Assembly (NCBI GenBank): GCA_002269645.1
Contig: NIVC01002918.1
Location: 1 to 64,000, forward strand
From: Macrostomum lignano
Lineage: Eukaryota
DNA length: 64,000 bases
Reading direction: 5' to 3'
The position numbers and the translations under genes were made by a program. The stretch's first letter is position 1; each line of letters begins with the position of its first letter. This document shows positions 12,200 through 45,225 of this stretch, piece after piece. The notes below the pieces were generated by a model. It was not told the DNA's origin. It searched no databases and saw nothing but the letters and a program-made list of their open reading frames with translations.

Positions 12200-12865
12200 C
12201 AATCAAATCGGTCACTTTCGCTTCAACGCACGCCTTGTTGGCATAGTTTTTTTCCTTCAACTCCGAAAGTCCTTGCAATATGTTTTGCAATCGTTCAGCG
12301 AGCTCGTCCGGGCATTGTTTCCTCCATTTCGATAGGTTTCCTTAACCTAGTAAGTTTCATTTTTTCTAAATTTCCAGTATTAAGAAGCCAATCAGAAAAG
12401 TGCCATAGGATAAATTTTAAATTCCGAAATCGAAACTGCTCTGCGACTTTGGTGCTCTCCTCTGATTGAGTCACGGCAATGTGCGTATTCGTGCCATAGA
12501 CGCTAAGGAAGTTGCCACCAAATGCCACTGAGTCCTCGGGGGTGAAGACTGCATGGATCCACCCTGCCGGCACCAGCAATGTGTTTCTTGGCTGCAGCAC
12601 AACACGGTAGACTGGGCCTGTTGCTGTTTCGTCCAGGAAAGCATCCGAGTCGGCAGTTTGCCAGTGCTCATATGCGCGGATGTTTCGCTCAGTAGGCAGC
12701 ATTAGATAAGAAATTTTACAGCCGCTGGCTAGCGTGAACCAAAAGTCGCTTCCACCTAGATCTATGTGAAAATTGGTAAATGATTTCTTCGCACTGATCA
12801 GCACTGATTCGGGAAGAGCTGATTATAAGCGGCATAAATTATTAATGCTAAATTTGGCATTCGGA
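12200..12865 (-). pseudogene. KDM2/KDM7(PHF8)-like JmjC histone demethylase domain, copy 1
   Basis: SFTNFHIDLGG...GCKISYL.LPT...VPAGWIHAVFTPEDSVAFGGNFL; the H-x-D...H metal ligands and 2-OG Lys are retained; in-frame stops at 12823 and 12295. Confidence 0.9.
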
Positions 12866-13240
12866 AATACCGACGTCTCGCTAATCACAGCGACGGTAAT
12901 GTTTGGATCCTCGTCCACCAGAGCCCTGACAGCAGCGATGTTGGCTTCGGTCACAGCTGTGCTGGGTCGTCCAGACCGGGGGTCGTCGTTCAAGGAGGCC
13001 CGTCCGGCGTTGATGGACTCTATCCACCTGGCGACCGTGCGATAGGAAGGGGCTTGGTCCCCGACTACCTGGACCAGGTCTGCATGGATTTTGACCGCGC
13101 TTTCTCCGAGTCGTGAGCGCAAGAAAACGTAGAATTGCCACTGGTCTGGTTGCACTGGCTCCATTTTTGGCAGATTGTAAAACACCACCTTGCGTTGGCC
13201 ACGCACAAGTATAACACATTCGAGGGAAAAAAGTCATACT
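12866..13240 (-). mobile_element. Mariner (Tc1/mariner) transposase N-terminal double-HTH fragment
   Basis: MEP...GESAVKIHADLVQVVGDQAPSYRTVARW...SLNDDPRSGRPSTAVT.ANIAAVRALVDEDPNITV is the mariner PAI/RED signature; ATG at 13164; the DDD domain is absent. Confidence 0.88.
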
Positions 13241-13316
13241 CTATGGTTAAAACCAATATATGTCGGCGATTTCGTAAAAAAATTTCATCGCTTTGTGATA
13301 TGTACTTTTAGAGATA

Positions 13317-13979
13317 TTAGGTCAGTTGCCAAAACTTTTTGAATGCCCCTCGTAGGAACCCTCTCACCCAATTTATGTAATCTGATTTAGACTGATCCTG
13401 CGTCTCCTGCGTCTCCTGCGGCTGCTCCTGCTCCAGCTCGGCTGGTCGTAGCGCCTGCTGCTGCTGCTGCTCGAGCTCGGCCGGTTGTAGCGCCTGCTGC
13501 TGCTGCTGCTGCTCGCGCTCGGCCGGTTGTAGCGCCTGCTGCTGCTGCTGCTGCTCGCGCTCGGCCGGTTGTAGCGCCTGCTGCTGCTGCTGCTGCTGCT
13601 GCTCGGCTTGGTGCCACGTTGCAGGATGCGGTGGCAGTGGTCGGCCATTAACAATCTCTGTGCGGGCCACAGCTAGATAGGCTCGTGCGTACTCGCGTGC
13701 CTGCACTTGATGCTCTTTGCCCTTTATGGGCTTTCCCTTATGCTCATCGAGCTCCGGGTGGTGGCTTCTGTAGTGCGAGCGGAGCAGAACGCACGCCTCT
13801 CTACACACACAGCACATGCCGTGACCAGAGGTAACTGATCGCTCGAAGGTCGCAAACCATAAGGTCGCTGCGTCATCTTCGACGCGATGATCTGGGTGTC
13901 GACTTCTAGCATGGCATGCCAAGTTGTCTTTTCGCATTTCCGCTTCGCAGATGACGCAGTTTACATGGATTGATGGCAT
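13317..13979 (-). CDS. Intact intronless 220-aa protein: two C2H2-type Zn fingers, RPLPPHPxxWH motif, polyQ repeats
   Basis: CVIC.AEMRKDNLACHARSRH and CCVC...HYRSHH; ATG to stop is open; paralogs elsewhere in the window. Confidence 0.8.
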   Translation of the reverse strand: MPSIHVNCVICEAEMRKDNLACHARSRHPDHRVEDDAATLWFATFERSVTSGHGMCCVCREACVLLRSHYRSHHPELDEHKGKPIKGKEHQVQAREYARAYLAVARTEIVNGRPLPPHPATWHQAEQQQQQQQQALQPAEREQQQQQQALQPAEREQQQQQQALQPAELEQQQQQALRPAELEQEQPQETQETQDQSKSDYINWVRGFLRGAFKKFWQLT

Positions 13980-14397
13980 GATCGCTGTTCGCTGAGGGTG
14001 AAAGGTTTCGCACGAACTATTCCTATCCGATTTGCCGGGCAGGAATGTGAAAGAAATATACCAATAGTAAAGATATTAAAAGATTGATCGATTTAAATAC
14101 ATTTCAATCTCAATCAAAGACTGATTAATTGAGTGATAATCAGTCAATCAGTCAACCAGTCAATCATTCAATCTGTCAATCAGTCAGTCAATCATTAAAT
14201 AAATTAGTCAATCAGTCAATCAGTCAATCAATGTTTTGATGCTGTCCCTCTTTTGTCCTTATTTTGTCTTGGGCCGCCCCCGTGGCCGACCCACAGGGCC
14301 CACCCCCCCCCCGATTTATAATACAGTACAGTAAAAGTTTTTGTAATTTTAGAAAGCTTAATATCAACATTTGAATATGATTGCAATTTCTAACGAC

Positions 14398-15060: not shown

Positions 15061-15290
15061 TTTAATCTGCTAACAAAGTTCCCAATCTTGTTCGTGTGGA
15101 AGACGACCCGGATGTTACGATTGAAAGAGGCAAAGAATTGCCTCTTTCAATTGCCTGCATTGTAATTTTGATAGGTTATCTGCTAATTATTCGAAATCAA
15201 TCAAATCGGCCACTTTCGCTTCAACGCACGCCTTGTTGGCACAGTTTTTTCCTTCAACTCCTTAATTTCGACAATTTATTCATACTATAC
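15060..15290 (-). pseudogene. Third fragment of the JmjC gene (C-terminal part)
   Basis: 15160-15262 is homologous to 12170-12265, immediately downstream of JmjC copy 1. Confidence 0.65.
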
Positions 15291-15816
15291 TAATTGATAA
15301 TTAAAAGAGCAGCGTGTATTGCGATAAAATTTAGACTGATAAAATAATTACATCGAAAATTATTGAAATATTAATAATAAGCACAGGATTCAAACAAGCA
15401 AACAATAAGCATACAAGTAAGCAAACAAATAAGTAAATATTTTACATTATATAGTATTAGTATATACATTATGCATTATTTACATCATACATTATACATT
15501 ATGCGTTATATATACACAGGGGCGTAGCCAGGAATTATGTTTGGGGGGCGTGAGTTAGGAAGCGCCAGTTTCTTTATAGGGGGGAGGGCTGCCAGTTTTT
15601 TTATAGGGAGGCACCAATTTTTTTAATGGGGGGGCGCCAATTTCTTTATAGGAGGGGGGCAGTTTATAGGGTTAGGGCGCCAGTTTCTTTATGGGGGGCG
15701 CCAGGAAAGCGGCAGCATTTCCAAAGGGGCGGTAAACCGCAGTTCTGGGGGGGGGGGCGCGACGTGAAGTTGATTTTAATAAGTGAAATGGGGGGCGTTG
15801 CAGACGTTGCAGACCT

Positions 15817-16140
15817 AGTCCCTGGCGTTCTTGATTGCCTCTTGAAATTGACAAGTCCAACGGAGAAGCATCACTGGCGCCAGGCGGATCGCTTGCTTCT
15901 TCGAGATCGGCCCAAATTTGCTCCCGTTGACATCTTCTCCCTGTAAGCTGTCGGGCTAGGGTAGATCGGGCTTTGGCTTGTAGGATCACGGTAGAGTACA
16001 AAATTTCGAATCTTGTTTTCGATGATCCTCCTAACTCGACGTTCGACTTTCGTTCGACGTTCGACGTTCGACGTTCGACGTTCCATTGCTGATGAGCAGA
16101 AAATTTGTTAAAAGGAGAATAGCTGGTAAAGGCACACGAA
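15817..16140 (-). repeat. Dispersed repeat X, copy 1 (copies at 20325-20540 + and 39515-39810 -); coding-like, contains PLDLS
   Basis: Near-identical segments at three places; (TTCGACG)n expansion at 16035-16082 only in this copy. Confidence 0.85.
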
Positions 16141-16480
16141 GGCTCGAATAAACTAAATATCCTAAGTAGTATCTCGAGTGTATGCTTAAGAAAATAATTT
16201 TCGCCCAGAAAATTGTCTGCGCAGCAGATAGGCAGGCATATTTGGAGTGAGAAAGTATTTGAGCACAGTTTAGCAGCGGCTTGGCCTGAATGCGCTCACA
16301 AAAACTGAACTTCCACTTTGCTTCAGCTGTACAAATTCATTGCAGGGTTGCGAGTTGCAGCAACTCCACTGTACACGGGGTGTTCTGAACTTCTCCCTGT
16401 CTGTGTTCGTTTCACGTTCATTTTGTTTATTCGTCCGAGTTTCACACCCGCGGCAAAACTGCGCTGTTCGCGTGAAGAAC

Positions 16481-16873
16481 GCGTTCGCCTCCCGATATCT
16501 ACGACGGCATGAGTTCGTCTGCGAATATGCTGGCGAGCTTATAGAGTCGCGAAAGTTCATTGACCAGCGTGTCGAGCACTACGAACAACATGGCCTCGAC
16601 ACCTGGTACATTTGTGAGGTTGTGCATCACTAAAAAAACTACGCGATTGACGCGCAGTACACCGAGCGACTCGGCCGCTTTCTGAATCACTCAAGGAGAA
16701 GTCCGAACTGTGTTGCCAGAATCATTTCAGTGCCTGTGGCCTACAAAACGTGCCGCCCCGCACTTTACTTCATTACGAATCGTGCGGTCGATAAGGGCGA
16801 GGAACTGCTGTTTGATTACGGCCCAGATGACCGAGAGACAATTAAAGCATGCACATGGCTTATTGACCGTTAA
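16481..16873 (+). pseudogene. SETD8/PR-Set7-like SET domain, copy 1 (in-frame TAA at 16631)
   Basis: EFVCEYAGELI...YAIDA..TERLGRFLNHSRRSPNC...LYFITNRAVDKGEELLFDYG...CTWL; lacks the N-terminal GxG motif. Confidence 0.88.
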
Positions 16874-16930
16874 ATGTTGTTGCCTGACCCTAAACATTGC
16901 TCAAACTAATTTCACAGCGCTTGGGGCCCC

Positions 16931-17968
16931 CCATGCACTTGCTGCTAATGCTTGAGCTACACCAACGGCTCCATTATTTCTAACGCCTACATTCTAATTC
17001 TTACTTACTCGATACCTTCTTAACAAATGATGCTGCACCATTTATGACGAGGTGACAACAAACAATGAAACTCAATCTGAAACGTGCGAAATTTAACAGT
17101 CCCAGACTTCTATTGTTCCTATTAAATTTGAAACAGTGGGACAAGGCCTCCTGCAGAGCAGCCCATAGAAATCTGAAACGTGCGAAATTTAACAGTCCCA
17201 GACTTCTTTTGTTCCTATAAAATTTGAAACAGCGGGACAAGGCCTCTTGCAGAGCAGGCCCATTGAAATTTTCTGGTGCCCAAGCTAATATTGGCTTTTA
17301 GAGGATTAACACATACCGTACAGGCCTAATTTTGCGCTCTATTCCTAAATATTTACACGTTGCTAACTGAGCGCAGGGCTACAACATAAAACTAAACATT
17401 ATGGAAACGCTTGCGTAAATAAGCGAAAATCGGTATCCTACAAGGCAACACGCGAATAATTCGATAAGCTAAGCGGGAGGGAATTAAGCAATCACGGTCA
17501 AATGGTCAATCCACCACTCAGCGGGGGTTAAAAGGGAGACTGACTACTAGTAAATAGACCTTCTCGGTTCTGTAGTCTATGATTGCGTGAGTGCCAGCTA
17601 GAAAAGCGCTGCCCTGACCCTAACGGCCTGCGTGTGAAAACATTCAAGGCTTATTTCTGAAAGTCATTTAGTTCCAATCTATTGTTACTATGGTTGAAGG
17701 TTACAGTTGAGGGACTTTCTATTCATATATTTTCCAATAATTGCTTGTGTTGTTAACCTTTAAAATTCGTCGAGATTTGTTACTATTTGGCTATGACGCA
17801 TTCACTCTGCTAGTTTCGTATCACCATTGTCTTGTAAACTTTTGGCAATACTAATTGCTTAAATGGCTTTCGACAAGCATAAAGGTCAAAGGTCAAACGC
17901 TGTTGTTATGTCATGCACGCGCACATGGAGATCGATATTTATGCATACACATAGTCAAATATAGACCC
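16931..17968 (+). repeat. ~1-kb repeat, inverted copy at 35507-36427
   Basis: Colinear reverse-complement similarity; this copy has an extra ~95-bp internal tandem duplication (17075-17255). Confidence 0.9.
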
Positions 17969-18312
17969 TAACCCAAACCCAAACCCTAACCCTAACCCTA
18001 ACCCTTCCCATATTTCCCATAGTTGACAATGACCCCCCGCTCATAACGATGATCCATAATATGACCGCAGATCTCCCAGATCCATATGTTACATCTATAT
18101 ATTTAGCCAGAGTGGTAAAATATCATCCCTAGCTGACACTTTATTCCCAGTAGACATTTTATTCCCAGCAGCCAATTTAGCTCCAACTAACAATCCTCAG
18201 ATGAAATTTCAAACAGAATTTTATTTGCTCTTGTAAATCTCAAAGTGTCCAATTATTTGTATATATTAAATTTTAAATACTACGATTGTAATTAATTATA
18301 CGAAGAGCTTAC

Positions 18313-18590
18313 CTTTTTAGCTTTTCGATTTCGTCTGCGAATCGATGCCAGGTCGACGGATGAGTCGGCATCTCAGCATCCGTCTGGAGCGCCTTTCTCG
18401 CTATAGGCACATATGCAACAGCAAATTGCCTTGCCAGCCTTTTGTGAGGCTTGCCTTGTAAAACAATACCATTCCATAACTTCACTCCTGTGTGACGAAA
18501 GTAATGTGGCGAATACTGAATATATTTTATATTCTTTATTGATATGATAAGAGTGCAGTAAGAGTACGTCCATACGGCGAAAGCAGCGCA
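18313..18590 (-). pseudogene. Diverged exon of the double-C2H2 family (not in the ORF-track frame)
   Basis: PHYFRHTGVKLWNGIVLQGKPHKRLARQFAVAYVPIARKALQTDAEMPTHPSTWHRF aligns with HYRHHH...NGQSMKGPAHIRLVRDYAQAYVPAARQAIQQDRPLPPHPSKWHRF; donor GTAAG at 18312. Confidence 0.75.
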
Positions 18591-19749: not shown

Positions 19750-20049
19750 AATAACACCGTCTCACCTGGATGCTCGCGCCGGTAGTGGTCTCGAATGCTG
19801 GCACTCAGAGCGGCGTGGTGCAGATCATGCACATAACGCCGCTCTCTACCCGAACCTTGTGCTCCATCGTGCTGAACGAACGAAGGTCGGCAAACCTTCG
19901 GTAGATCGGTTAAGACGGTTAAGATCGGTTAGGCACGTTAAGACGAACTTAGAATGGTTCGTCTTAACGTGCCGCTGTAGGTTATCTAACCTCATTTGCT
20001 TGCAGCAAAGGGCGCACTCTTTATCTATCGTTTTCTTTTTCTCTGCCAT
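19750..20049 (-). pseudogene. Double-C2H2 family pseudogene
   Basis: CALCCKQMRLDNLQRHVKTNH, then across frameshifts EHKVRVESGVMCMIC and IRDHYRREHP. Confidence 0.8.
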
Positions 20050-20144
20050 TTTCGTGCAAAGAAATTACTTAACTTCGATTTTACTGCGAGTGCCTTTACT
20101 TATATACCCTAACCCTAACCCTGACCCTAAATTTTTAGGAGTTG

Positions 20145-20275
20145 CCAACCAATAGGAACTTGCCAACCAATAGGAACTTGCCAACCAATCTTGCCAACCA
20201 ATAGGAACTTGCCAACCAATCTTGCCAACCAATAGGAACTTGCCAACCAATCTTGCCAACCAATAGGAAATGTCT
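20145..20275. repeat. Tandem CCAAT-containing 18/13-bp repeats upstream of the 20049 ATG
   Basis: TTGCCAACCAATAGGAAC / TTGCCAACCAATC units, directly visible. Confidence 0.85.
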
Positions 20276-20909
20276 CGCTTAGCAGTCAGCCAAAAGGCAA
20301 TAATTAATTATCAATCTCACACCCGAAAACAAGATTCGAAATTTTGTACTCTACCGTGGTCCTACAAGCCAAAGCCCGATCTACCCTAGCCCGACAGCTT
20401 ACAGGGAAAAGATGTCAACGGGAGCAACTTTAGGCCGATCTCGAAGAAGCAAGCGATCCGCCTGGCGCCAGTGATGCTTCTCCGTTGGACTTGTCAATTT
20501 CAAGAGGCAATCAAGAACGCCAGAGACTACTAGGTCTAGGGTTTGCTTGTTTGAATCACTTACTTATATTATTATTTCGCTTTAATTATTTTATCAATCT
20601 AACTTATTACGCATCATATTTTTAGCTGTTTACTGCCTTTGTAATTACACATTTTTATACATGTATTAAAAATACGCGCTGCTCTTTTACATGTAATTAT
20701 CAATTTATCTGGTATTAATTAATTGTCATACTAGAAGACCATGAAATTCGTGTCGCAGTTTTTGCCTTCTTATCTCTTTTTCAAGCGTGTTTATTATGCA
20801 CAGGAACTGCTGGCTACTTAGTAGAAAAATTAGATAGAAATTTAGTAAATTTTCTAAGAAATTTAAATAGTAAGTAGCGTGCGGTAAGGCTGATTGATGA
20901 TACTCTACC

Positions 20910-21250
20910 AAATGCCACTGAGTCCTCGGGGGTGAAGACTGCATGGATCCACCCTGCTGGCACCAGCAATGTGTCTCTTGGCTGCAGCACAACACGGTAG
21001 ACTGGGCCTGTTGCTGTTTCGTCCAGGAAAGTATCCGAGTCGGCAGCTTGCCAGTGCTCATATGCGCGGATGTTTCGCTCAGTAGGCAGCATTAGATAAA
21101 AAAATTTACAGGCGCTGGCTAGCGTGAACTAAATGTCGCTTCCACCTAGATCTATGTGAAAATTGGTAAATGATTTCTTCGCACTGATCAGCACTGATTC
21201 TGGAACAGCTGATTCTAAGCGGCATAAATTATTAATGCTAAATTTGGTGA
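20910..21250 (-). pseudogene. KDM2/7-like JmjC domain, copy 2 (premature TAG, 3' truncated)
   Basis: Highly similar to 12520-12860; ends after EDSVAFG. Confidence 0.9.
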
Positions 21251-22649
21251 ATAGTTCCGGCGTTTAAATATTTTCAAACGCCGTTCCCTGCTTTTTAATA
21301 TTTAAAAATTTCATTACCTTACCTTGCCTTGCCCTACCTCTCTGACTGAAATAAATTAAGCAATCACTTATTGAAATTTCAATGCTATCCTGTAAATCGC
21401 AGTCGATCGTCTTAATTTGTGCATTACCTAGATTGACTGATTGACTGATTGACTGATTGACTGATTGACTGATTGACTGATTGACTGATTGACCGAGTAT
21501 CACTCAATTAATCACCAGTCTTTGGTTGAGATTGAGATTTATTTAAATCAATCAATCTTTCATTATCTTTGATAGATTAACAATAGGGACAATCTAGGCA
21601 ACAAAACAATGGGCCGTAAAGACGCCGTTGTCTGGCCCCAAGCCCAGAATGAAAAAGTCTGAGGGCGGCACTCTCTGCTTCAGGAATTTACAGTCTCTAT
21701 GTCTCTCTCTGTACTTGAGGCTTATCTATCTATTTCAATCAGAATTTTGTGGGGATCGCTAAAATTGACATGCATTTACAGAGTACAGCGTACAGAGTAC
21801 AGCGTACAGAGTACAGTGTACAGAGTACAGCGCGTACTATCCTAACTATCCTGAAAACAACTTTAGATCCCCCGCCTACCACTTGCGCTACAACATATAC
21901 ACAAATGGGAGTCAGGTAAATACATTTTCCTACTTGAATTTTAAGCAACAAATCAAAGAAAAATATTTTAGTTACTGTGTTCGCATCTCAATCTGATCTT
22001 TGACTGCTTTTGGATCTTGAGATAATGCCAGTACCGATGACGCGCGTCCAGATGACGCAACCGAGCGTGTGTCAGCAGCAGTCTACAAAAATCGGTAAAA
22101 TTTGGTGGAATACTGAGAGATGGAGCCTGATGAATCACAGACAGTGAAGGTATGTATGCAAAATAAAAAAAGTCATGCATCATCAGCAGATCAAAATGCA
22201 CGCACGCCAAAACCTCCCAAAATCTCAAAACCCAAATCCTTTAAATTACATTACCTTTACTGTAATTACTGATGCGCTTTGTTTTTTACTTACATTCATG
22301 AATTTGAAGTAAGAAAAATAGCACTTCAGACCCCCCTTCAGTTCAGTGGGACAGGAAGAACCCTTATTGCACAAAATTGTCATGAAATCCCCCTTCAGAC
22401 AATGAAAAGCAGAAAATGAAAGATTAAACCAGTTAATACCACCGGATGACTGGGCTTTTAACATAGAGTCATACATAGACAGCAGTGTTGGAACATTTTT
22501 CAAAGGAGGGCTATTGGTGGGGGGGCACTTCGCACATTATTTTTTTAATCTAAGGGCACCCTAACTCTCGCTGTTATGATGTCAGTTTGTGACATTGTGA
22601 CAACCAGGCCAATATTCAATTGTGTTGAAAGTAGTAATAAAAAGTGTGA

Positions 22650-23799: not shown

Positions 23800-24210
23800 C
23801 ATCTTGCTGGCTCGCTGCCCGCTCAATGAATCGATGCCACTTCGAAGGATGCGGTGGCAAAGGGCGATCCTGCTGAATGGCCTGTCGCGCTGCAGGCACG
23901 TATGCCTGCGCATAGTCACGGACAAGCCGTATATGAGCTGGACCCTTCATGGACTGGCCGTTGTGCTGCACTACGTCTGCGTGGTGGTGTCGGTAGTGGT
24001 CGCGCATCTGCTGGCTTCTAGGCAATCAGCAATGCAGCACATGCCAGCATTTTCGACCCGCACTTTGTGCTCAAAGATAAGGAACCATCGCAGTTCATGA
24101 ACGCGATGTAGGAACGCTTTGTGCATTAAGCCGCAATGGCGCTTGAGATTGTCAAGCCTCATTCTCTGGCCGCAGAGCGCACATTCTTTACTTTTTTCGT
24201 TAGATGCCAT
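23800..24210 (-). pseudogene. Double-C2H2 family paralog with one frameshift near 24020
   Basis: MASNEKSKECALCGQRMRLDNLKRHCGLMH...CCIADC / MRDHYRHHH...RPLPPHPSKWH; donor GTGAGT near 23800. Confidence 0.85.
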
Positions 24211-24829
24211 GCCAATCGGCAAATACAATTAAAAGCCAAAGGATCGATTTGGTAGCTTTATTATATAGCAGTTAAAACTGGACATCTACATGACATTGGT
24301 CGCTTATCCAATTGACGGAGCTTTGACCCTATACATACATATTTGGCTGTCTACAATTGGCTAGAAAGTGGGGTGGGGTCAGTGGGGTGGGGTCGTAGTT
24401 GGGGTCTCTTTCGCACGTTGCACCCAAAGAAAAGAGTTGTGAAAACAAAAGATTAGTAGCATGAGAAAGTTATAGAGTGAGTTGCTTAGGAAACGGAAGG
24501 GGGACAACGGGGTCGAGTATGGTTGAGAAAAAGGGTCAGTAAAGCCAGAGAGGTAGAGATGGATGAAAATATGAGACACAACTGAGATAGAAGATCTATC
24601 AATCATCTATCAATCTATCATCTATCATCTATCAATCTATCAATCTATCAATCATTTATTCCGTCAATCAATCATCAATGTTTTGTTGCCTATGCTGTCC
24701 CTCTTTTGTCCTTATTTGCCCCCTATCTTGGGCCGTCCCGTGGCCGACCCTAACCCTAACCTTAATTAACCCTAACCCACCGATAAAATAATGTTTTATG
24801 GTTTCTTCAATAGAACTCAGAAGCCGTTG

Positions 24830-30800: not shown

Positions 30801-33380
30801 GAGTTTCGCAGCTCAGCTCATGAGGTAGCCAGCTCGCTCACACTTTGGCTGCACAAAAATTTATAAATTTGTACTCAATTGTACTCAATTGTGCGGCACT
30901 ATGACGGTTATGCAGCCAGCATCAAACCCCGCCAGCTACCCTCAATTAGAATTTTGTGGGGATCGCTAAAATTGACATGCAGTTTTGCTACTGCAAGAAG
31001 TAATATATAAGTGGATGTTTGTATCTTAGTAAAATTTTGTAGTAAAAATGAAAATTGTTAATGTCCAAAACTTGTGAATTTGAATTCTTGGCAAATCATA
31101 TTCTCAGATGTAAAGCTGCTGTCTGTTTTTTCTGCACAAGCTAACCCATTAATGACCTAAATAAAATTCACCAATATCGATCAGTGTAGTCTGTACTCAT
31201 CAAGATTGAGTCTGTACCTCACCAAATAAATATCGTTTAGCTGCACCAATTCTGTTTTTAGTTCTGAGCTCACTTTTCTGTTTTTAGTTTGAGCAGCTCT
31301 AACGGCCTTAAAAAGTGTTATCAGGGACTCATAAAGCGTTCTCAGGGACTCAAAAAGCGTTCTCAGGGACTCAAAAAGCGCTCTTAAGGTTATTTATGGA
31401 GCTCACTTTTCTGTTTTTAGTTTGAGCAGCTCTAACGGCCTCAAAAAGCGCTCTCAAGGTTATGGAGCTCACTTTTCTGTTTTTAGTTTGAGCAGCTCTA
31501 ACGGCCTCAAAAAGCGTTCTCAGGGACTCAAAAAGCGTTTTCAGGGACTCAAAAAGCGCTCTCAAGGTTATGGAGCTCACTTTTCTGTTTTTAGTTTGAG
31601 CAGCTCTAACGGCCTCAAAAAGCGTTCTCAGGGACTTAAAAAGCGTTCTCAGGGACTCAAAAAGCGCTCTCAAGGTTATGGAGCTCACTTTTCTGTTTTT
31701 AGTTTGAGCAGCCCTAACGGCCTTAAAAAGCGTTCTCAGGGACTCAAAAAGCGTTCTCAGGGACTCAAAAAGCGTTCTCAGGGTTATGGAGCTCACTTAT
31801 CTGTTGTTAGTTTTAGCAGCTCTAACGGCCTCAAAAAGCGCTCTCAGGGACTCAAAATGCGTTCTCAGGGACTAAAAAAGCGTTCTCAGGGACTCAAAAA
31901 GCGTTCTCAGGGACTCAAAAAGCGCTCTCAAGGTTATTTATGGAGCTCACTTTTCTGTTTTTAGTTTGAGCAGCTCTAACGGCCTTTAAAAGCGTTCTCA
32001 GGGACTCATAAAGCGTTCTCAGGGACTCAAAAAGCGCTCTCAAGGTTATGGAGCTCACTTTTCTGTTTTTAGTTTGAGCAGCTCTGACGGCCTTAAAAAG
32101 TGTTATCAGGGACTCAAAAAGCGTTCTCAGAGACTCAAAAAGCGTTCTCAGAAACTAAAAAAGCGTTCTCAGGGACCCAAAAAGCGTTCTCAGGGACTAA
32201 AAAAGTGTTCTCAGGGACTAAAAAAGCGTTCTCAGGGACTCAAAATGCGTTCTCAGGGACTAAAAAAGCGTTCTCAGGGACTCAAAAAGCGTTCTCAGGG
32301 ACTCAAAAAGCGCTCTCAAGATTATGGTGCTCACTTTTCTGTTTTTAGTTTGAGCAGCTCTAACGGCCTTAAAAAGTGTTATCAGGGACTCATAAAGCGT
32401 TCTCAGGGACTCAAAAAGCGTTCTCAGGGACTCAAAAAGCGTTCTCAGGGACTCAAAATGCGTTCTCAGGGACTCAAAAAGCGTTCTCAGGGACTCAAAA
32501 AGCGCTCTCAAGGTTATGGAGCTCACTTTTCTGTTTTTAGTTTGAGCAGCTCTGACGGCCTTAAAAAGTGTTATCAGGGACTCATAAAGCGTTCTCAGGG
32601 ACTCAAAAAGCGTTCTCAGGGACTCAAAAAGCGCTCTCAAGGTTATTTATGGAGCTCACTTTTCTGTTTTTAGTTTGAGCAGCTCTAACGGCCTCAAAAA
32701 GCGCTCTCAAGGTTATGGAGCTCACTTTTCTGTTTTTAGTTTGAGCAGCTCTAACGGCCTCAAAAAGCGTTCTCAGGGACTCAAAAAGCGTTCTCAGGGA
32801 CTCAAAAAGCGTTCTCAGGGACTCAAAAAGCGCTCTCAAGGTTATGGAGCTCACTTTTCTGTTTTTAGTTTGAGCAGCTCTGACGGCCTTAAAAAGTGTT
32901 ATCAGGGACTCAAAAAGCGTTCTCAGAGACTCAAAAAGCGTTCTCAGGGACTCAAAAAGCGTTCTCAGGGACTCAAAATGCGTTCTCAGGGACTCAAAAA
33001 GCGTTCTCAGGGACTCAAAAAGCGCTCTCAAGGTTATGGAGCTCACTTTTCTGTTTTTAGTTTGAGCAGCTCTAACGGCCTTAAAAAGTGTTATCAGGGA
33101 CTCATAAAGCGTTCTCAGGGACTCAAAAAGCGTTCTCAGGGACTCAAAAAGCGTTCTCAGGGACTCAAAATGCGTTCTCAGGGACTCAAAAAGCGTTCTC
33201 AGGGACTCAAAAAGCGCTCTCAAGGTTATGGAGCTCACTTTTCTGTTTTTAGTTTGAGCAGCTCTGACGGCCTTAAAAAGTGTTATCAGGGACTCAAAAA
33301 GCGTTCTCAGGGACTCAAAAAGCGTTCTCAGGGACTCAAAAAGCGTTCTCAAGGTTATGGAGCTCACTTTTCTGTCTGTC
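24830..33380. repeat. Compound minisatellite: 66-bp (or 70-bp) head unit plus variable runs of a 21-bp unit, in ~2.6-kb higher-order repeats
   Basis: 21-bp CAGGGACTCAAAAAGCGTTCT; 66-bp period measured (25081 to 25147). Diagnostic variants recur at offsets 2543/2609 and spacers at 2522/2630. Confidence 0.97.
28225..28730. repeat. ~500-bp non-satellite spacer (copies at 30747-31252 and 33377-33882)
   Basis: Three apparently identical copies punctuate the satellite; they share a 34-mer with 21741-21775. Confidence 0.95.
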
Positions 33381-35506
33381 TTAGTTAACCCTTAACCCTA
33401 ATGGTGAGTTGCCATGAGTACAATTTCCATGAGTTTCGCAGCTCAGCTCATGAGGTAGCCAGCTCGCTCACACTTTGGCTGCACAAAAATTTATAAATTT
33501 GTACTCAATTGTACTCAATTGTGCGGCACTATGACGGTTATGCAGCCAGCATCAAACCCCGCCAGCTACCCTCAATTAGAATTTTGTGGGGATCGCTAAA
33601 ATTGACATGCAGTTTTGCTACTGCAAGAAGTAATATATAAGTGGATGTTTGTATCTTAGTAAAATTTTGTAGTAAAAATGAAAATTGTTAATGTCCAAAA
33701 CTTGTGAATTTGAATTCTTGGCAAATCATATTCTCAGATGTAAAGCTGCTGTCTGTTTTTTCTGCACAAGCTAACCCATTAATGACCTAAATAAAATTCA
33801 CCAATATCGATCAGTGTAGTCTGTACTCATCAAGATTGAGTCTGTACCTCACCAAATAAATATCGTTTAGCTGCACCAATAACTTAAACTTTAAATCATA
33901 ATAACGAGTATCATCAATCAGCCTTACCGCACGCTACTTACCATTTAAATTTCTTAGAAAATTTAATAAATTTCTTACTAAGTAGCGAGCAGTTCCTGTG
34001 TATACTAAACACGCTTAAAAATGAGATTATTAACTTGACTACTTGAAAACAATATACAGGCATAAGCATAATCGCATTTTCATACATGTATAATTCTACA
34101 GGCTGAACAGCTAAAATATGATGCGATATAAGTATATTTTATAATAAAATGATTAATAAAATGATTAAATCGAAAATGATTAATGAAATAATAAGCAAAC
34201 GAGGATATACATTATATATTATACATTATACATTATATATACATCATACTGCGACCCGAATTTCATGGCCTTCTGACGGCTGCGACGGCTTCGACGGCTC
34301 CGATGGCCCATAGGGCGATGGCCAGATGGCCCAGTCACTGGCCTGAAGAGGCGGCGTTCCTGGCGCCGTAGGCCATGAGAACTCTGGGAGTAAAGATAGC
34401 AGAGGTGGGCCGCGTGTTAGATAAGAGTTGGCAGCAGTCATTCGTATTTGCCCCCCCCCTAGATGGGTAGAATCTGGGAAGCAGGGCGTCACTATATTTT
34501 GGGAGACTTATTATCATATAGCGTCTTTTTCTAAGTGAATAATAAGGGGCGTTTGGTTTCAAAATTGTAGATGGCTGACGTTTTTTGTAGTTTTCCGGTC
34601 ACGGAGACAAAACTTGTCAAGACATTCTATGATTGCTTGTTTTTTCTTAGTGGTAAAAACTAAGGCGGACGGGCATCTTAATCCTAAAATCTAGCCATTG
34701 ATCCAAATGAGTCATCTGGTGACGGGACTTACCAAAAAACGCAGGTCGAAGCTCAGCGCCGAAGTATCGTCAGTTAGCCATGTATGGCTTTTTGCCTGGC
34801 CTCTTGAAAAAGGCATGTCCAGAAGTTCAGCATTTCTGGTGCGAGTCGAGTCGCCTGCTTCTTCGATATTGGACCAAATTTAGAGCCGTTGATTGACTAC
34901 TTTCTCTTGATAGTTTTTAGGGGTGGGATGGACCGGCTCTCGGCTTCCCGGGCCTCTGTACAGGACGAATTTAATAATTTTCTTTTTTATTACGCGGCGA
35001 ACAGGTTTGTTCATTGTTGCTATTAATGCAAACTAGTTTTATATTTAGTATAGATCGAAGATAGTATATTAGTTGTATATGCGGACTTAAAAGTCAACTC
35101 AACTCCTCTATATATTATGCCCCTAACCCCACACAACCCGCCGCTAATAGTGAGTCAGTGTACGGGCTGGCTGTCGTCTATGCCTCATGTAAATATCTCT
35201 GAAAATAAGGCAGTATTAAACAGTAGCAACGTTAATTTAACAGTCAAGTAACCAAGCGTTGCGCAAACAATGAAACTATATTGGTGTGAATCTACAAAAC
35301 GCAACCTACATCGACAAGAGCCACGAATTTGTTAGGATTAGGAGGTTAATTGATATACCACTCTAAATACCAACAGTACGTACTTTCTATTGTTGCTGCC
35401 GTATGTTAAGCAGCAAATCAAATTACAGGGATTTAGCAGGAAATTAGCACAAATTATCATTGCGTATAGGGAGGCGATTTTAATTTCGTTTTTTTTAGTC
35501 TTGGAA

Positions 35507-42129: not shown

Positions 42130-43520
42130 ACATAAAATACTCATTGGGAATTGCTAAGATGTCAAGGCTCATGATAGACATTCTAAGATATCGTGTCAAG
42201 GTTCAAATTGCTTTGATGTTAAGGTTCATTTAGGAAATTGTTGAGATATCAAAGCTCACTAAAAATTCTTTGCTGTCAAGGCTCATGAAAATAATTACTG
42301 GAATGCTTTGGCTGTTTGGGGAATTGCCTAAATTGTTAGGGTAAGAGTAAGATGTAAACCATAAATGAATTTGGCTTTCAAACATAAAATACTCATTGGG
42401 TAATTACTAAGAGGTCAAGGCTCATGGGGGATCTGAATTATACTGTGGCTCAATGCTCAGGGTGAATTGTTGTGATTGCAACACATTGGTATTTTGCAAA
42501 ATTTTGTCGCTAAAAAGGGGTTGCTGAAATATCATGGCTCATTGGGGAATCGCTGGGATGTCAAAACTAACGGGGATCCCTATAATGCTGTAGGCTGTGA
42601 CTCTTGGCCGTCTTGGGTTATTGCAGAGCTTCTTAGGTTCACAGGGAAATGGCTGAGATTTCAAAGGCTCCTAAAGGAATAGCTTAATTCACGAAATGTC
42701 AATGTTCTTTGGGTAATTGTTAAAATGCTGTGGTTCATGGTGAGAATTGCTGAAATGCTGTCAGTGACTTAGGAGGGTTAGGGTTCAATCATAAGACATC
42801 ATAAGTGCCAAAATGCCAAGATAACATAGGTTAGTGCCGAGGTTAGTCGTTAAATTTCCAGGCTCATGTAGAAATTGCTAACATTTCAAAAGCTCATTGG
42901 GAAATTTCTGAAATTCGGCTGTAGGTTAAGGCTTGTGGTTTTAGTTCAATTATAGTTATAGAGCGATGATTTTCGTGTCAATCATAAATGATTCATAGGG
43001 GAATTGCTAAGATTAAACGCTCTTGGGGCAAATTATACTTAAATGCTTTGGCTCTACTGGGAGTCGCCGACAGGTCAAGGCTTTCGGTGAAATTTAGATT
43101 ACGAAGCTTATGAGGACGTTACTTTAGTGCCGAGGCTCAAGGCTCATGCTGGAACTTGCTAACATGCCAAGACTCAGTTATGGGTTAGGGTTGGGGGCTT
43201 AGGTGAGCTTTGTTTCAATCATAGATTAACCGCTGTCAACTATCAATTAAAGACTTGCTAAGATATCAAAGCTCGTGGGGAATCGCTGAGTTAACAAGGC
43301 CCATAAAAAATTTGAGTTATCGAGGCTCATAAGGGTATTGCTGAATTTTTGGGAGAGGGGAGTTGGATTGTTAGAACTTCAAGGCTTACAGCGCTGGTAG
43401 AATTGCGAAGATTTCGAGGCTCGAGATCAATTGCTGCGATGTCAAGGCATACTGGCGGAATTGCTGAGATATTTCAAGGCTCATGAACGATAGCTGAATT
43501 GTTGGGGGAGGGGGGTGTTA
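42130..43520. repeat. Highly degenerate ~28-bp minisatellite (GGGAATTGCTAAGATGTCAAGGCTCAT-like)
   Basis: The motif recurs many times; related units occur in RPA-like intron 1 (7350-7470). Confidence 0.7.
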
Positions 43521-44823
43521 GGTTATTGGGCGATTGCCAGATAGTCAGGTAGTACGAGCGTACGTCTGAAGTAGCGCATGCAATTCAGATAATGAAATAG
43601 TACACACAAGTGATGCTGATTTCTGCTAATAGGAAATACCAGCGCATTTATTAAAGATTTGATTATCTGCTATAGGCTAATAAAGAGAGAGGGTCTAAAG
43701 CCGTCAGGGATTTGCATATTGAGCTCCTGCTGCGGGCCAGAATATGCCCCGGCCAGTGACGATGTGCACCAACAGTTTGTGCTTGAAAGGATAAGCTCTA
43801 TTTGCTGATTGAGAAATGGTTTTGGGCTGAGTGGGAACCTTTTTGGACTGATGAAGATTTTGATTCATGGTAATCATGGCAATTTGGTGTCATTTTGAAG
43901 GCCCCCAGCGGGGGCTAAATGGCTAGTCTTATACTAATATGCTTGCTCATTTTTGAATCTTAAGCGCTGAAATATATTCGCTTTGATGGCTTTGCCGATA
44001 GAGTTTATTGTTGTTCCGGTCACCACACCAGGCTCGTATTAATCGAATCATTTTGCTGACCCCTTGAAGAAGGTGAGCTTTTCAACCCTGTGAGCAAGTC
44101 ATGAATTTTTAAGTCAGATTTGTTAATAAAATTTGTTAATATTGTCTGATTTTTTCGGCAATATCCAACCCATGACTTACATACAACCGCCTCTAACAAT
44201 CCTTTAATTTCGATGCATGCGGGCAGTGTACTCATCAAGATTGTAAACTTTATCCTCCTCACCATTTATATTAGCCTAAAAAATATTTTTTCTCAATGTG
44301 CGGTGCTGTGGACTGCCCTAAAGCCGGCCTCGAACTTCAAACCGCCCCTCTATCATCAGAATATTGTAGGAATTCCTGCTCGGAAAATTGCAGCAACAAC
44401 AGTACATACGTACTACGAGCCATACTAGCGTTTAGAGAGTTGTCACTCTCCAATATTGGTTAAACTTTCCTGTAACAATGTATTGAAATAACATTGTTTA
44501 AAATCGCTGTTATCTCTAAGTTAAGCTAAGGCAGTAGCTAAACAGCAAAAAATATGCTGCGATATAAGTATATTTTATAATGAAATGATAAATTAAATAA
44601 TTAAATCGAAAATAATTAATGAAATAATAAGCAAACGAGGAAATACATCATATATGAGACATTAATCCATTATATATTATACATTATACATTATATATAC
44701 ATCATACATTATATACGTTACACATTTTATATCAATTTTTGACGAGTACGCAATACGCTGCGAAATTAGCATGAGCAATGTTTAGCAATGAGCAAAGGTC
44801 AGGCAACAGTCAACAGTCAACAG

Positions 44824-45225
44824 TCAATATGTACATGCCTCACCTGTCTCTCGATCATTTGGTCCGTAATCAAAAAGCAGTTCTTCGCCCTTATCCACCA
44901 CGCGATTTGTAATAAAATAAAGTGCGGGCGGCGCAAGCTTAAAAATGTACCAAGTGTCGAGACCACACTGTTGGTAGTGCTCAACACGCTGGTAAATGGT
45001 CTTTCGCGACTAGGTTAGCCCGCCAGCATATTCACACACGAATTCATACCGTCGTAGAGATCGGGAGGCGAACGCCCCCTTCCCCTTATTTCCGGCATCA
45101 GCGACGACAACGGCCCTATCGTCACTGGCTATTATAAGGGATATTATATCCGCCTCCGGATTCCACCGTCTCTTCCTTTTGCGCATCATAAACGGCGATC
45201 TGGCAATGCCAAGCTTCAGCGCCAA
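44824..45225 (-). pseudogene. SETD8/PR-Set7-like SET domain, copy 2 (TAG at 45010, internal deletion of the NHS motif)
   Basis: VVADAGNKGKGAFASRSLRRYEFVCEYAG...LYFITNRVVDKGEELLFDYGP; homologous to 16481-16873. Confidence 0.88.

What the first reader, a model, noticed from the sequence alone, without database searches (positions are those of the whole stretch)
12200..45225. Repeated chromatin writer/eraser cassette: SETD8-like SET + KDM2/7-like JmjC + zinc fingers amid shared flanking repeats
Two SET copies, two or three JmjC copies and five zinc-finger copies are interleaved with shared AT-rich blocks (15290-15515, 20540-20910, 33900-34250, 44540-44720) and repeat X. In two places a zinc-finger exon lies upstream of JmjC on the same strand (13979 to 12200; 24210 to 20910). 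Established: SETD8 writes and PHF8/KDM7B erases H4K20me1. Inference: an amplified, possibly mobile module that carries paired chromatin modifiers with a sequence-specific DNA-binding partner, perhaps to control its own chromatin state.
Basis: partly seen in the sequence, partly recalled or inferred. Interest (0 to 1): 0.72.

Follow-up and report, generated by a model that had tools for sequence, protein, structure and literature searches.

The report
Decayed SET, JmjC, zinc-finger gene patchwork
This stretch of an unidentified animal-like genome holds broken copies of a SET8-like histone methyltransferase gene, a KDM2/7-like JmjC demethylase gene and a private C2H2 zinc-finger exon, scattered through a repeat-rich patchwork; they were copied at very different times, so they are gene-family wreckage rather than one amplified, self-regulating mobile cassette.

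Summary
The domain calls hold up. There are two SET8/KMT5A-like copies, two KDM2/7-like JmjC copies and four fragments of an orphan C2H2-type zinc-finger exon. The four AT-rich blocks are related to each other. A zinc-finger exon lies upstream of each JmjC copy on the same strand.

The "cassette" reading does not hold:
- **Copy ages differ widely.** The JmjC pair has dS about 0.025 and dN/dS about 1.6. The SET pair has dS about 0.5 and dN/dS 0.19. The zinc-finger paralogs are saturated at synonymous sites.
- **Order and orientation differ.** SET has no fixed position relative to ZF/JmjC, and the second "cassette" holds only SET.
- **No mobility signs.** No transposase, reverse transcriptase, helicase or integrase lies inside, and no terminal repeats or shared outer boundaries were found.
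- **Every enzyme copy is disabled** by stops, a deletion or truncation at repeat junctions.
- **The shared flanks are small interspersed repeats.**

Three short (CCCTAA)n tracts sit exactly at block boundaries beside an 8.6-kb satellite. My best reading is a birth-and-death cluster of lineage-specific chromatin genes inside a subtelomere-like duplicon and transposon mosaic. No close relatives were found in any collection searched, so genome-wide linkage and mobility remain untested. A telomere-associated giant-element reading is not excluded.

The parts
12295..12857 (-). JmjC copy A. It holds the core and C-terminal helical part of a KDM2/7-like JmjC domain. The HxD...H iron triad is kept. One in-frame stop lies at 12823-12825. 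The N-terminal third of the domain is missing.
   Evidence: Pfam JmjC 2e-6. PDB best hits are ceKDM7A 4.8e-28, PHF8 1.1e-27 and KDM2A 3e-26. Frame view.
12858..13206 (-). N-terminal HTH fragment of a mariner-type transposase. It abuts JmjC A in the same frame and replaces the JmjC N-terminal part.
   Evidence: Pfam HTH_48 8.9e-6, HTH_32 6.8e-7 and HTH_29 2.9e-6. The junction is defined by the alignment with copy B.
13353..13550 (-). Poly-Q / CAG-rich tail of the ZF_A ORF. It is a copy of the sequence that follows the LINE ORF2 stop at 11452-11656(+), with the same end point. It is probably a 5'-truncated LINE 3' end.
   Evidence: blastn 85-92% identity. End points. LINE RNase H and zf-RVT at 10858-11451.
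13602..13979 (-). ZF_A. It has two C2H2-like fingers plus a conserved helical region ending in HPxxWH. It starts at an ATG and lies inside the only intact ORF (13317-13979, 220 aa).
   Evidence: No Pfam family matches. Exhaustive HMMER search finds only generic C2H2 arrays.
14069..14310 (-). T' module upstream of ZF_A. It consists of a decayed G-rich tract, a conserved ~70 nt stretch, a (TGATTGAC)n microsatellite and a conserved ~90 nt stretch.
   Evidence: Alignment with 24595-24750 and 21423-21570.
15159..15261 (+). Copy of the JmjC A 3' flank (12161-12264), 93% identical. This is all that remains of a possible third JmjC copy.
15270..15516 (+). AT-rich block AT1.
15816..16137 (+). Short interspersed repeat d1. 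Other copies are d2 20324-20534(-), d3 39514-39809(+) and d4 34785-35019(+).
16463..16873 (+). SET copy 1. It is SET8/KMT5A-like and intronless. It has one in-frame stop, is 5'-truncated relative to copy 2, and ends 'TWLIDR*' as SET8 ends 'PWLKH*'.
   Evidence: Pfam SET 3e-14. PDB KMT5A 2.2e-14..
16931..17966 (+). Repeat f1. Its partner is f2 at 35507-36427(-), 90-93% identical. Both copies have the same 3' end, '...ATATAGAC'.
17966..18007 (-). Short telomere-type tract of about 7 (TTAGGG) units at the end of f1.
18312..18518 (-). ZF_C2. This is the C-terminal half of a ZF exon and ends at AAAAG|GTAAGC.
19761..20049 (-). ZF_C1. This is the N-terminal two thirds of a ZF exon, with two frameshifts. 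TATATAAG lies about 50 bp upstream of its ATG.
20107..20130 (-). Short telomere-type tract of 4 (TTAGGG) units, 58 bp upstream of the ZF_C1 ATG. It is preceded by a 31-bp tandem repeat (20159-20269) rich in CCAAT-box-like motifs.
20541..20905 (-). AT-rich block AT2. It includes the 134-bp 'R-left' part that is shared with AT3 and cuts off JmjC B.
20907..21428 (-). JmjC copy B. It holds the N-terminal part and core of the domain, intronless over 174 codons. It has two in-frame stops and is truncated after '...SVAFG' by the AT2 repeat.
   Evidence: tblastn with fungal JHDM1 P0001/P0002, 6e-28. Pfam JmjC..
21423..21669 (+). Third, permuted T' copy abutting the JmjC B start, followed by a sub-threshold twister-P1 ribozyme match at 21613-21669(+).
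23804..24210 (-). ZF_B. This is a full-length ZF exon with one frameshift. It starts at an ATG and ends at GAT|GTGAGT.
24595..24765 (-). T' module upstream of ZF_B, with a (TTAGGG)3 tract at 24748-24765 on the border of the satellite.
24800..33400 (.). Complex satellite built on a 21-bp unit with ~2.5-2.6 kb higher-order repeats. It separates the two halves of the finding.
33906..34249 (+). AT-rich block AT3 (R-left plus core). No JmjC is attached to it.
44537..44732 (+). AT-rich block AT4, immediately 3' of SET copy 2.
44824..45189 (-). SET copy 2. It starts 'MMRKRKRRW...'. It has one in-frame stop and a ~129-bp internal deletion. It shares ~40 bp of 3' flank with copy 1.

Best explanation
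The region is a decayed cluster of lineage-specific chromatin-gene paralogs embedded in a duplicon and transposon patchwork. The patchwork looks subtelomeric or otherwise heterochromatic.

Two ancestral gene types were involved:
- A gene whose first coding exon encodes two C2H2-like zinc fingers, and whose downstream exon(s) encode a KDM2/7-type Fe(II)/2-oxoglutarate JmjC demethylase domain.
- A small intronless gene encoding little more than a SET8-like SET domain behind a basic N-terminus.

These genes were copied by DNA-level duplication and unequal recombination at different times. They were then broken by insertions and deletions at the ends of small interspersed repeats (AT block, d, f, T', a mariner fragment, a LINE tail). 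All enzyme copies in the window are now pseudogenes, so nothing here acts on chromatin today.

Shown: the domain identities, the disabling lesions, the discordant copy ages, the absence of mobility genes, and the telomere-type tracts at block boundaries. Inferred: that ZF and JmjC belonged to one transcript, that intact functional paralogs exist or existed elsewhere, and that the setting is subtelomere-like.
For: **Copy ages**
- The JmjC A/B shared 341 bp is 96.5% identical. It has 10 non-synonymous changes (two are stops) against 2 synonymous, giving dN/dS about 1.6. This is a recent copy of an already unconstrained sequence.
- SET1 versus SET2 gives dS 0.52, dN 0.096 and ratio 0.19, and each copy has its own stop or deletion. 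They descend from different once-functional paralogs.
- ZF paralogs are 33-45% identical at the protein level, with pS 0.69-0.99 against pN 0.30-0.50. This is an ancient, selected protein family.

**Arrangement and context**
- All six ZF and JmjC pieces lie on the minus strand within 12 kb, as in a tandem array.
- JmjC A and B break at different points against unrelated repeats, a mariner HTH and R-left/AT2.
- Pfam scans of stop-to-stop segments of at least 48 aa (11.6-24.8 kb) and at least 40 aa (33.4-36.8 and 38.2-46 kb) find only SET, JmjC and the mariner fragment.
- AT, d, f and T' recur with different neighbours.
- Three (CCCTAA)n tracts in one orientation sit exactly at block boundaries, where none is expected by chance. 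An 8.6-kb satellite and a 1.4-kb (GAGAG)n array lie alongside.
- The flanks are a transposon graveyard: IS1595 transposase, LINE RT/RNase H, Gypsy pol and a DUF3504 (Crypton-like, from memory) fragment.
Against: - Two unrelated chromatin-enzyme families lying together within 33 kb, twice for SET, is not explained by a plain host-gene cluster and hints at some form of linkage.
- The SET pattern (purifying selection between copies, each then killed independently) is also what transposon-borne genes show.
- No intact ZF-JmjC or SET relative was found in 1.84 billion representative proteins or in the other collections. The existence of functional parent genes is therefore inferred, not shown.
- The splice phases of the ZF_B donor and the nearest JmjC_B acceptor do not match directly.
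- The species and the chromosomal position are unknown.
Confidence: 0.55

Rival explanations
1. Telomere-associated giant retroelement array, Terminon-like. On this reading the blocks are units added one after another to a chromosome end. Each unit is bounded by short telomeric repeats, and the ZF, JmjC and SET genes are cargo or host genes trapped between units.
For: - Three (CCCTAA)n tracts in one orientation lie at block boundaries.
- Two different repeats, T' and f, begin at the same nucleotide next to such tracts.
- A twister-like ribozyme match lies next to a T' copy.
- A 5'-truncated Penelope-like GIY-YIG fragment lies at 14730-15005.
Against: - No Athena-type or other RT lies within 11.6-46 kb.
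- The ribozyme hit is below Rfam's threshold, is on the wrong strand for a 3'-terminal fold next to (CCCTAA)n, and has no match in the T' copy next to the tract.
- The genes would be antisense to such units.
- The GIY-YIG hit is weak (E = 0.01).
Confidence: 0.12
2. One reading: a mobile DNA cassette (transposon, Helitron or other large element) carries SET, ZF-JmjC and flanking repeats as one unit and has been amplified.
For: - Several copies of each part lie within 33 kb, and the AT and d repeats are shared next to them.
- SET copies diverged under purifying selection, as genes of an active element would.
- TE-chromatin gene fusions are known, for example SETMAR and SET-TE fusions (bioRxiv 10.1101/2021.11.30.470311).
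Against: - The copy ages of the parts are discordant.
- There is no constant order or orientation, and the second 'cassette' lacks JmjC and ZF.
- No transposase, Rep/helicase or integrase lies inside.
- No terminal inverted repeats bound any unit. The only long inverted repeat, 39946-40892, encloses 405 bp.
- No relatives were found in viral or metagenome collections.
Confidence: 0.1
3. Ordinary processed pseudogenes (retrocopies) of the host's canonical SETD8 and KDM7/KDM2 genes that happened to land in a repeat-rich region.
For: - The SET copies are intronless throughout, and the JmjC coding sequence runs 170+ codons without an intron.
- SET1 is 5'-truncated relative to SET2.
- LINEs are present nearby.
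Against: - No poly-A tail or target-site duplication is visible after the shared 3' flank.
- The JmjC scores about equally against the KDM7, PHF8, KDM2A and PHF2 structures (1e-24 to 5e-28), and the closest database relatives are only 43-46% identical. The SET match to KMT5A is weak (2e-14). This looks too divergent for recent retrocopies of canonical orthologs.
- SET1 and SET2 diverged under selection, which dead-on-arrival retrocopies do not.
- The ZF exon with splice donors upstream of JmjC argues for genomic rather than mRNA-derived copies.
Confidence: 0.08
4. Assembly artefact: collapsed or mis-joined repeats create an apparent patchwork.
For: The region is dense in satellites and near-identical higher-order repeats, which are hard to assemble.
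Against: - The copies differ by 3.5% to more than 50% and have distinct lesions and junctions, which is not what collapse or duplication errors produce.
- The junctions fall at defined repeat ends.
Confidence: 0.05

Closest known systems
KMT5A / SETD8 / PR-Set7 (H4K20 mono-methyltransferase)
   Same: It is the best solved-structure match for the SET copies (2e-14). The NHS and ELLxDYG motifs are present. The protein ends a few residues after a 'WL', with no Cys-rich post-SET region.
   Different: - The match is weak (2e-14).
- The ORF is a short, SET-only reading frame of about 185 aa behind a basic N-terminus, and it is intronless.
- Phe replaces the residue that aligns with SET8 Tyr334. From memory of the literature, that residue controls mono- versus di-methylation.
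- Both copies are disabled.
KDM7 / PHF8 / PHF2 and KDM2 (JHDM1) JmjC demethylases
   Same: They are the best matches for the JmjC copies (1e-28 to 1e-24; fungal JHDM1 43-46% identity). The HxD...H triad and the 2-oxoglutarate Lys are kept.
   Different: - No PHD, CXXC, F-box or LRR domain was found anywhere in the region.
- A private C2H2-like double finger lies upstream instead.
- Phe sits at the position I recall as PHF8 Tyr257.
- The substrate cannot be inferred, so the pairing 'PHF8 erases what SETD8 writes' is a resemblance and not a result.
SETMAR and other transposon-chromatin gene fusions (bioRxiv 10.1101/2021.11.30.470311)
   Same: A mariner HTH fragment is joined in frame to a chromatin-enzyme domain (12858-13206 to JmjC A). 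SET domains are known to be fused to or captured by transposons.
   Different: Here the junction carries a stop codon and removes the N-terminal third of the JmjC fold. It is a wreck and not a domesticated fusion. The SET is SET8-like, not the SETMAR type.
Terminons / telomere-associated Penelope-like elements (PMC6431247)
   Same: Short telomeric-repeat tracts in one orientation separate the blocks. Host-like genes lie between repeat units. A self-cleaving-ribozyme-like motif lies nearby.
   Different: No RT is present. The ribozyme match is a sub-threshold twister rather than a hammerhead, and it is not at a 3' end next to the tract.
Subtelomeric duplicon mosaics, e.g. human subtelomeres (from general knowledge)
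   Same: The region is a patchwork of blocks copied at different times. Interstitial (TTAGGG)n islands lie at block boundaries. Satellites and multi-copy gene-family pseudogenes are present.
   Different: The chromosomal position is unknown here, and the tracts are very short (18-42 bp).
JmjC proteins with C2H2 fingers: plant REF6/ELF6, yeast Gis1/Rph1 (from general knowledge)
   Same: The concept is the same: a JmjC demethylase aimed at DNA by C2H2 zinc fingers.
   Different: Those proteins belong to the KDM4-type JmjN+JmjC clade and carry their fingers at the C-terminus. Here the JmjC is KDM2/7-type with the fingers in an upstream exon, and the link between them is unproven.

Membership tests
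KMT5A/SETD8-type SET domain | SET fold with NHS and ELxY/FDY motifs, scoring above the family threshold | tested here: met
   Pfam SET 53.7 bits against a cut-off of 22.4 for copy 1. Copy 2 scores 21.6 bits, just below the cut-off. The motifs RFLNHS and EELLFDYG are visible.
KMT5A/SETD8-type SET domain | Closest to KMT5A rather than to other SET clades | tested here: inconclusive
   The top PDB hits are KMT5A at 2e-14. KMT2C/D follow at 4e-10 to 2e-9. No tree was built, and the database relatives are at most 33% identical over the domain.
KMT5A/SETD8-type SET domain | Intact reading frame | tested here: not met
   Copy 1 has one stop and is 5'-truncated. Copy 2 has one stop and a ~129-bp deletion.
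KMT5A/SETD8-type SET domain | H4K20 mono-methylation activity | not testable with these tools
   Phe sits at the position aligned with the first Tyr of the SET8 LYDY motif (alignment). From memory, that Tyr is Tyr334, the product-specificity switch.
KDM2/7 (JHDM1/PHF8) JmjC demethylase | JmjC domain with the HxD...H iron triad and the 2OG-binding Lys | tested here: met
   Pfam JmjC 28.7 bits against a cut-off of 24. FHIDLGG, GCKISY and WIHAV align with PHF8.
KDM2/7 (JHDM1/PHF8) JmjC demethylase | Accessory reader or targeting domains of the family (PHD for KDM7/PHF8; CXXC, PHD, F-box and LRR for KDM2) | tested here: not met
   None of these appears in Pfam scans of the ORF segments across 11.6-46 kb.
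KDM2/7 (JHDM1/PHF8) JmjC demethylase | Complete domain in an open frame | tested here: not met
   Copy A lacks the N-terminal third and has a stop. Copy B has two stops and lacks everything after 'AFG'.
Mobile element carrying the three genes | A transposase, RT, integrase or Rep-helicase inside the unit | tested here: not met
   Only SET, JmjC and a 115-aa mariner HTH fragment were found.
Mobile element carrying the three genes | The same internal order and orientation, and shared outer ends (TIR or TSD), in each copy | tested here: not met
   SET is + at 16.5 kb and - at 45 kb. The second region has no JmjC or ZF. No bounding inverted or direct terminal repeats were found.
Mobile element carrying the three genes | The parts of one copy show the same divergence from the parts of another copy | tested here: not met
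   dS is 0.025 for JmjC and 0.52 for SET, and is saturated for ZF.
Mobile element carrying the three genes | Copies at unrelated loci, or insertion polymorphism | not testable with these tools
   The source genome is not in any searchable collection.
Processed pseudogene | Intronless copy with a poly-A tail and target-site duplication | tested here: not met
   The copies are intronless, but neither SET copy has a poly-A tail or TSD after the shared 3' flank.
C2H2 zinc finger | C-x2-C-x11-12-H-x4-5-H spacing, beta-beta-alpha fold and a family-level score | tested here: inconclusive
   - The spacing is visible in copies A, B and C1.
- No Pfam hit was found.
- The profile search hits only generic C2H2 arrays, at 2.5e-9 or weaker.
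- The AlphaFold model has mean pLDDT 59.5. It gives beta-beta-alpha for finger 1 only.
Subtelomeric duplicon mosaic | Interstitial telomeric tracts at duplicon boundaries, satellites, and blocks of different ages | tested here: met
Subtelomeric duplicon mosaic | Location next to a chromosome end | not testable with these tools
   The window has no chromosomal coordinates.

The most novel reading that the evidence does not exclude
The ZF-JmjC and SET8-like genes are cargo of a previously undescribed telomere-associated or giant mobile element family in an under-sampled animal lineage. Under this reading, units are added at chromosome ends, which would explain the (TTAGGG)n tracts at block boundaries and the ribozyme-like motif. 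The element would bring its own DNA-targeted histone demethylase and methyltransferase, and active copies elsewhere in the genome would be under purifying selection.
Probability: 0.12. Interest if true: 0.75.

Novelty: new member of a known kind. Interest (0 to 1): 0.33.

Why it matters
As it stands, this is an ordinary kind of object: pseudogene fragments in a duplicon and transposon mosaic. It warns against reading co-located domain hits as a functional cassette.

Three things are still worth a follow-up:
- The zinc-finger exon has no detectable family among 1.84 billion representative proteins. It may define a lineage-specific way of aiming a KDM2/7-type demethylase at DNA.
- The SET8-like family evolved under selection as several paralogs. 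Intact members probably exist elsewhere and could be unusual minimal methyltransferases.
- Telomere-type tracts lie exactly at block borders. If the locus proves subtelomeric or element-built, it would show how chromatin-enzyme genes are shuffled at chromosome ends.

Tried and rejected
- **Exact-ORF look-ups to identify the genome** (ZF_A, IS1595 transposase): not on record.
- **Homology search with ZF+JmjC:** only two fungal JHDM1 fragments.
- **Homology search with SET:** hits at most 33% identical over the domain.
- **Homology search with the intact IS1595 transposase, to name the species:** best hits were 42-47% identical, in molluscs, arthropods and cnidarians, so the species is not in the database.
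- **Exhaustive HMMER with the ZF profile:** 18 weak hits, all generic C2H2 arrays.
- **Viral contigs with JmjC:** nothing. The ZF alignment was too divergent for that tool.
- **Metagenome contigs with JmjC:** nothing. With SET there were two spurious 41-residue matches.
- **Rfam at gathering threshold:** nothing. There are no tRNAs. A permissive whole-window search found nothing. No ribozyme lies in the T' copy next to the 24.75-kb telomeric tract.
- **AlphaFold model of the ZF:** confidence was too low (pLDDT 59.5), so no fold search was run.
- **Considered and dropped:**
  - A giant-virus or Polinton origin, because no viral hallmark genes and no viral-contig relatives were found.
  - A Helitron capture, because RPA-like OB folds lie at 6.8-8.1 kb but no Rep/helicase is present.
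  - The (TCAATCAG)n 'repeat c' as a meaningful shared block, because it is the microsatellite inside T'.
  - The GTGAGA 'donor' after the ZF_A poly-Q tail, because it coincides with the end of a LINE-tail copy.

Full report
**What the window is.** The 64-kb window is eukaryotic, animal-like and repeat-rich.
- The flanks of the finding carry an intact ISXO2/IS1595-type transposase ORF, two LINE RT/RNase H remnants, a Gypsy pol, a DUF3504 (Crypton-like, from memory) fragment and RPA-like OB folds.
- The IS1595 protein's best relatives are only 42-47% identical. They come from molluscs, arthropods and cnidarians.
- Exact-ORF look-ups fail. The source species is therefore not in the searchable collections and stays unknown.
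- An 8.6-kb satellite (21-bp unit, ~2.5-kb higher-order repeats) occupies 24.8-33.4 kb. A 1.4-kb (GAGAG)n array sits at 36.8-38.2 kb.

**Checking the observation.** The domain calls are right.
- *SET.* There are two copies, at 16463-16873(+) and 44824-45189(-). They match Pfam SET. Among solved structures they are closest to KMT5A/SETD8 (2e-14).
- *JmjC.* There are two copies, at 12295-12857(-) and 20907-21428(-). They match Pfam JmjC. Among structures they are closest to ceKDM7A, PHF8, KDM7A, KDM2A and PHF2 (5e-28 to 1e-23). Fungal JHDM1 is 43-46% identical.
- *Zinc finger.* A conserved exon-like ORF occurs as ZF_A (13602-13979), ZF_B (23804-24210), ZF_C1 (19761-20049) and ZF_C2 (18312-18518), all on the minus strand. 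It has two C2H2-like fingers and a helical tail ending in HPxxWH.
- *No further copies.* A profile search of all six frames finds none.
- *The supposed third JmjC* is only a 103-bp copy of the JmjC 3' flank (15159-15261).
- *The supposed fifth zinc finger* (11444-11656) is just the poly-Q tail of the ZF_A ORF. It directly follows the stop of a LINE ORF2. It ends at the same nucleotide as its copy inside ZF_A. It is therefore most simply a LINE 3' end, and ZF_A has taken in a 5'-truncated copy of it.
- *AT-rich blocks.* The four blocks are related to each other.

**State of the copies.** Every enzyme copy is dead.
- *JmjC A* has lost the N-terminal third of the domain to a mariner HTH fragment joined in frame at 12857/12858. 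It carries a stop six codons before the conserved core.
- *JmjC B* keeps the N-terminal part but has two stops. It ends after '...SVAFG', where a repeat (R-left/AT2) begins. The same repeat end recurs at 33906 with no JmjC attached.
- *SET1* has a stop and is 5'-truncated. *SET2* has a stop and a ~129-bp deletion.
- *ZF_A* is the only open ORF (220 aa). ZF_B has one frameshift, C1 has two, and C2 is a half copy.

**The key test: were the parts copied together?** They were not.
- The 341 bp shared by JmjC A and B are 96.5% identical. They differ by 10 non-synonymous changes (two nonsense) and 2 synonymous changes. That gives dS about 0.025 and dN/dS about 1.6. This is a recent copy of a sequence already drifting.
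- SET1 and SET2 differ at dS 0.52 and dN 0.096, a ratio of 0.19. Their lineages separated long ago and stayed under purifying selection. Each was then killed separately.
- The ZF paralogs are 33-45% identical as proteins. Their synonymous sites are saturated (pS 0.69-0.99), while pN is 0.30-0.50. This is an old, selected protein family.
- A cassette amplified as a unit would give similar divergence for all its parts.
- SET also has no fixed place. It is on the plus strand downstream of AT1-d1 at 16.5 kb. It is on the minus strand with AT4 on its 3' side at 45 kb. The 33.9-45.2-kb 'cassette' holds no JmjC or ZF at all.

**Mobility.**
- I scanned every stop-to-stop segment of at least 48 aa in 11.6-24.8 kb, and of at least 40 aa in 33.4-36.8 and 38.2-46 kb, against Pfam. 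The only hits were SET, JmjC and the mariner fragment.
- No inverted or direct terminal repeats bound any unit. The one long inverted repeat (39946-40216 / 40622-40892, 99%) encloses only 405 bp.
- The 'shared flanking repeats' are small interspersed elements with ends of their own. The d repeat has four copies (15816, 20324, 34785, 39514). The AT block has four copies and usually precedes d. The f repeat has two copies with the same 3' end. These elements recur with different neighbours.

**Is ZF-JmjC one gene?** It is plausible but unproven.
- Both JmjC copies have a ZF exon 0.5-2.4 kb upstream on the same strand.
- All six ZF and JmjC pieces share one strand.
- ZF_B and ZF_C2 end at strong donors (GAT|GTGAGT, AAAAG|GTAAGC).
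- JmjC B begins just after an AG behind a (TCAATCAG)n run.
- Against a simple reading, the nearest phases do not match, and about 65 residues of the N-terminal JmjC region are not found between the two exons.
- The ZF and JmjC ages in units A and B disagree. At least one adjacency is therefore secondary, for example from unequal crossing-over in a tandem array.
- The ZF profile finds nothing but generic C2H2 arrays among 1.84 billion representative proteins. No intact ZF-JmjC protein could be shown to exist.

**An unexpected feature.**
- Three short telomere-type tracts, all (CCCTAA)n on the plus strand, lie at 17966-18007, 20107-20130 and 24748-24765. None is expected by chance. Each sits exactly at a block boundary.
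- Read on the minus strand, the first (TTAGGG)n tract is followed by the end of repeat f1. The other copy of f has the same end without a tract.
- The second tract is followed by TATATAAG and, 58 bp from the tract, by the ZF_C1 ATG.
- The third tract is followed by a module, T', that also precedes ZF_A, where the tract is decayed and G-rich.
- A third, permuted T' copy abuts JmjC B. It is followed by a sub-threshold twister-P1 ribozyme match (21613-21669, 37.6 bits against a threshold of 67.2, E = 2.8e-5 in a 13.5-kb search). The core nucleotides are kept, but the hit is lost in a whole-window search.
- These tracts, together with the satellite, fit a subtelomere-like duplicon mosaic (general knowledge of such regions).
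[quoted passage not shown] However, no Athena-type RT is present, and the ribozyme is on the wrong strand and in the wrong place for that model.

**Function.** Nothing here can act today.
- The ancestral JmjC keeps the iron triad and the 2OG lysine. It has Phe at the position I recall as PHF8 Tyr257.
- No PHD or CXXC domain was found in the region, and the JmjC matches KDM2A about as well as PHF8. Its substrate is therefore open.
- The SET has Phe at the position aligned with the first Tyr of the SET8 LYDY motif. From memory of the literature, that residue is Tyr334, and changing it shifts SET8 from mono- towards di-methylation.

**Verdict.**
The interpretation as one amplified, possibly mobile, self-regulating cassette is not supported by the evidence in the window.
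- My best reading (about 0.55) is a birth-and-death cluster of lineage-specific chromatin genes wrecked within a subtelomere-like duplicon and transposon patchwork.
- A telomere-associated or giant-element origin (about 0.1-0.2 taken together) cannot be excluded without the rest of the genome.
- External searches for relatives all came back empty.

Noticed in passing
window 17966-18007, 20107-20130, 24748-24765: Three short telomere-type tracts, all (CCCTAA)n on the + strand, lie exactly at block boundaries. Two of them are 58 bp and 538 bp upstream of zinc-finger start codons. None is expected by chance.
   Followed up: partly
window 21613-21669 (+): A sub-threshold match to the type-P1 twister ribozyme (37.6 bits against a gathering score of 67.2; E = 2.8e-5 in 13.5 kb). 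The core nucleotides are kept and the optional stem is missing. It lies next to a T' repeat copy. The hit is lost when the whole window is searched.
   Followed up: partly
window 14069-14310, 21423-21620, 24595-24747: A repeat module T' has an internal (TGATTGAC)n microsatellite. It lies upstream of ZF_A and ZF_B on their strand. A permuted copy lies on the opposite strand, abutting JmjC B.
   Followed up: partly
window 12823-13206 (-): A mariner-type HTH fragment is joined in the same reading frame to the JmjC core. This is a SETMAR-like juxtaposition, but there is a stop codon at the junction and the JmjC N-terminal part is lost.
   Followed up: yes
window 24800-33400: A complex satellite is built on a 21-bp unit (CTCAAAAAGCGTTCTCAGGGA) mixed with a 66-bp unit. 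It is organised in ~2.5-2.6-kb higher-order repeats, with about three near-identical copies.
   Followed up: no
window 36820-38197: A 1.4-kb (GAGAG)n array with strong GC and AT skew.
   Followed up: no
window 39946-40892: A foldback structure: two 271-bp arms, 99% complementary, 405 bp apart. No coding signal was found. It could be a foldback/MITE-like element or a recent inverted duplication.
   Followed up: no
window 20159-20269: A perfect 31-bp tandem repeat (3.6 copies) full of CCAAT-box-like 'CCAATAGG/ATTGG' motifs. It lies just upstream of the telomeric tract and the TATA-like box of ZF_C1.
   Followed up: no
window 8614-9792 (-): An intact 392-aa ISXO2/IS1595-type transposase ORF (Pfam 4e-25). 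Its nearest database relatives are only 42-47% identical, in molluscs, a sea spider and a jellyfish.
   Followed up: partly
window 6799-8111 (+): Two adjacent ORFs encode RPA-like OB folds (REPA_OB_2 2e-11). They appear intronless. No Helitron Rep/helicase was found nearby.
   Followed up: partly
window 14730-15005 (-): A weak GIY-YIG match (E = 0.01) with a Penelope-like endonuclease look. It is probably a 5'-truncated Penelope-like element.
   Followed up: no
window 60048-61109 (-): An open 353-aa ORF is predicted to be coiled-coil with a Gly/Ala-rich hydrophobic stretch. It has no significant Pfam family and lies next to a Gypsy pol remnant (61.7-63.2 kb).
   Followed up: no
window 50000-54000: A GC-rich (57-64%) LINE remnant with RT and two RNase H segments on the minus strand. 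Its base composition differs sharply from the rest of the window.
   Followed up: no
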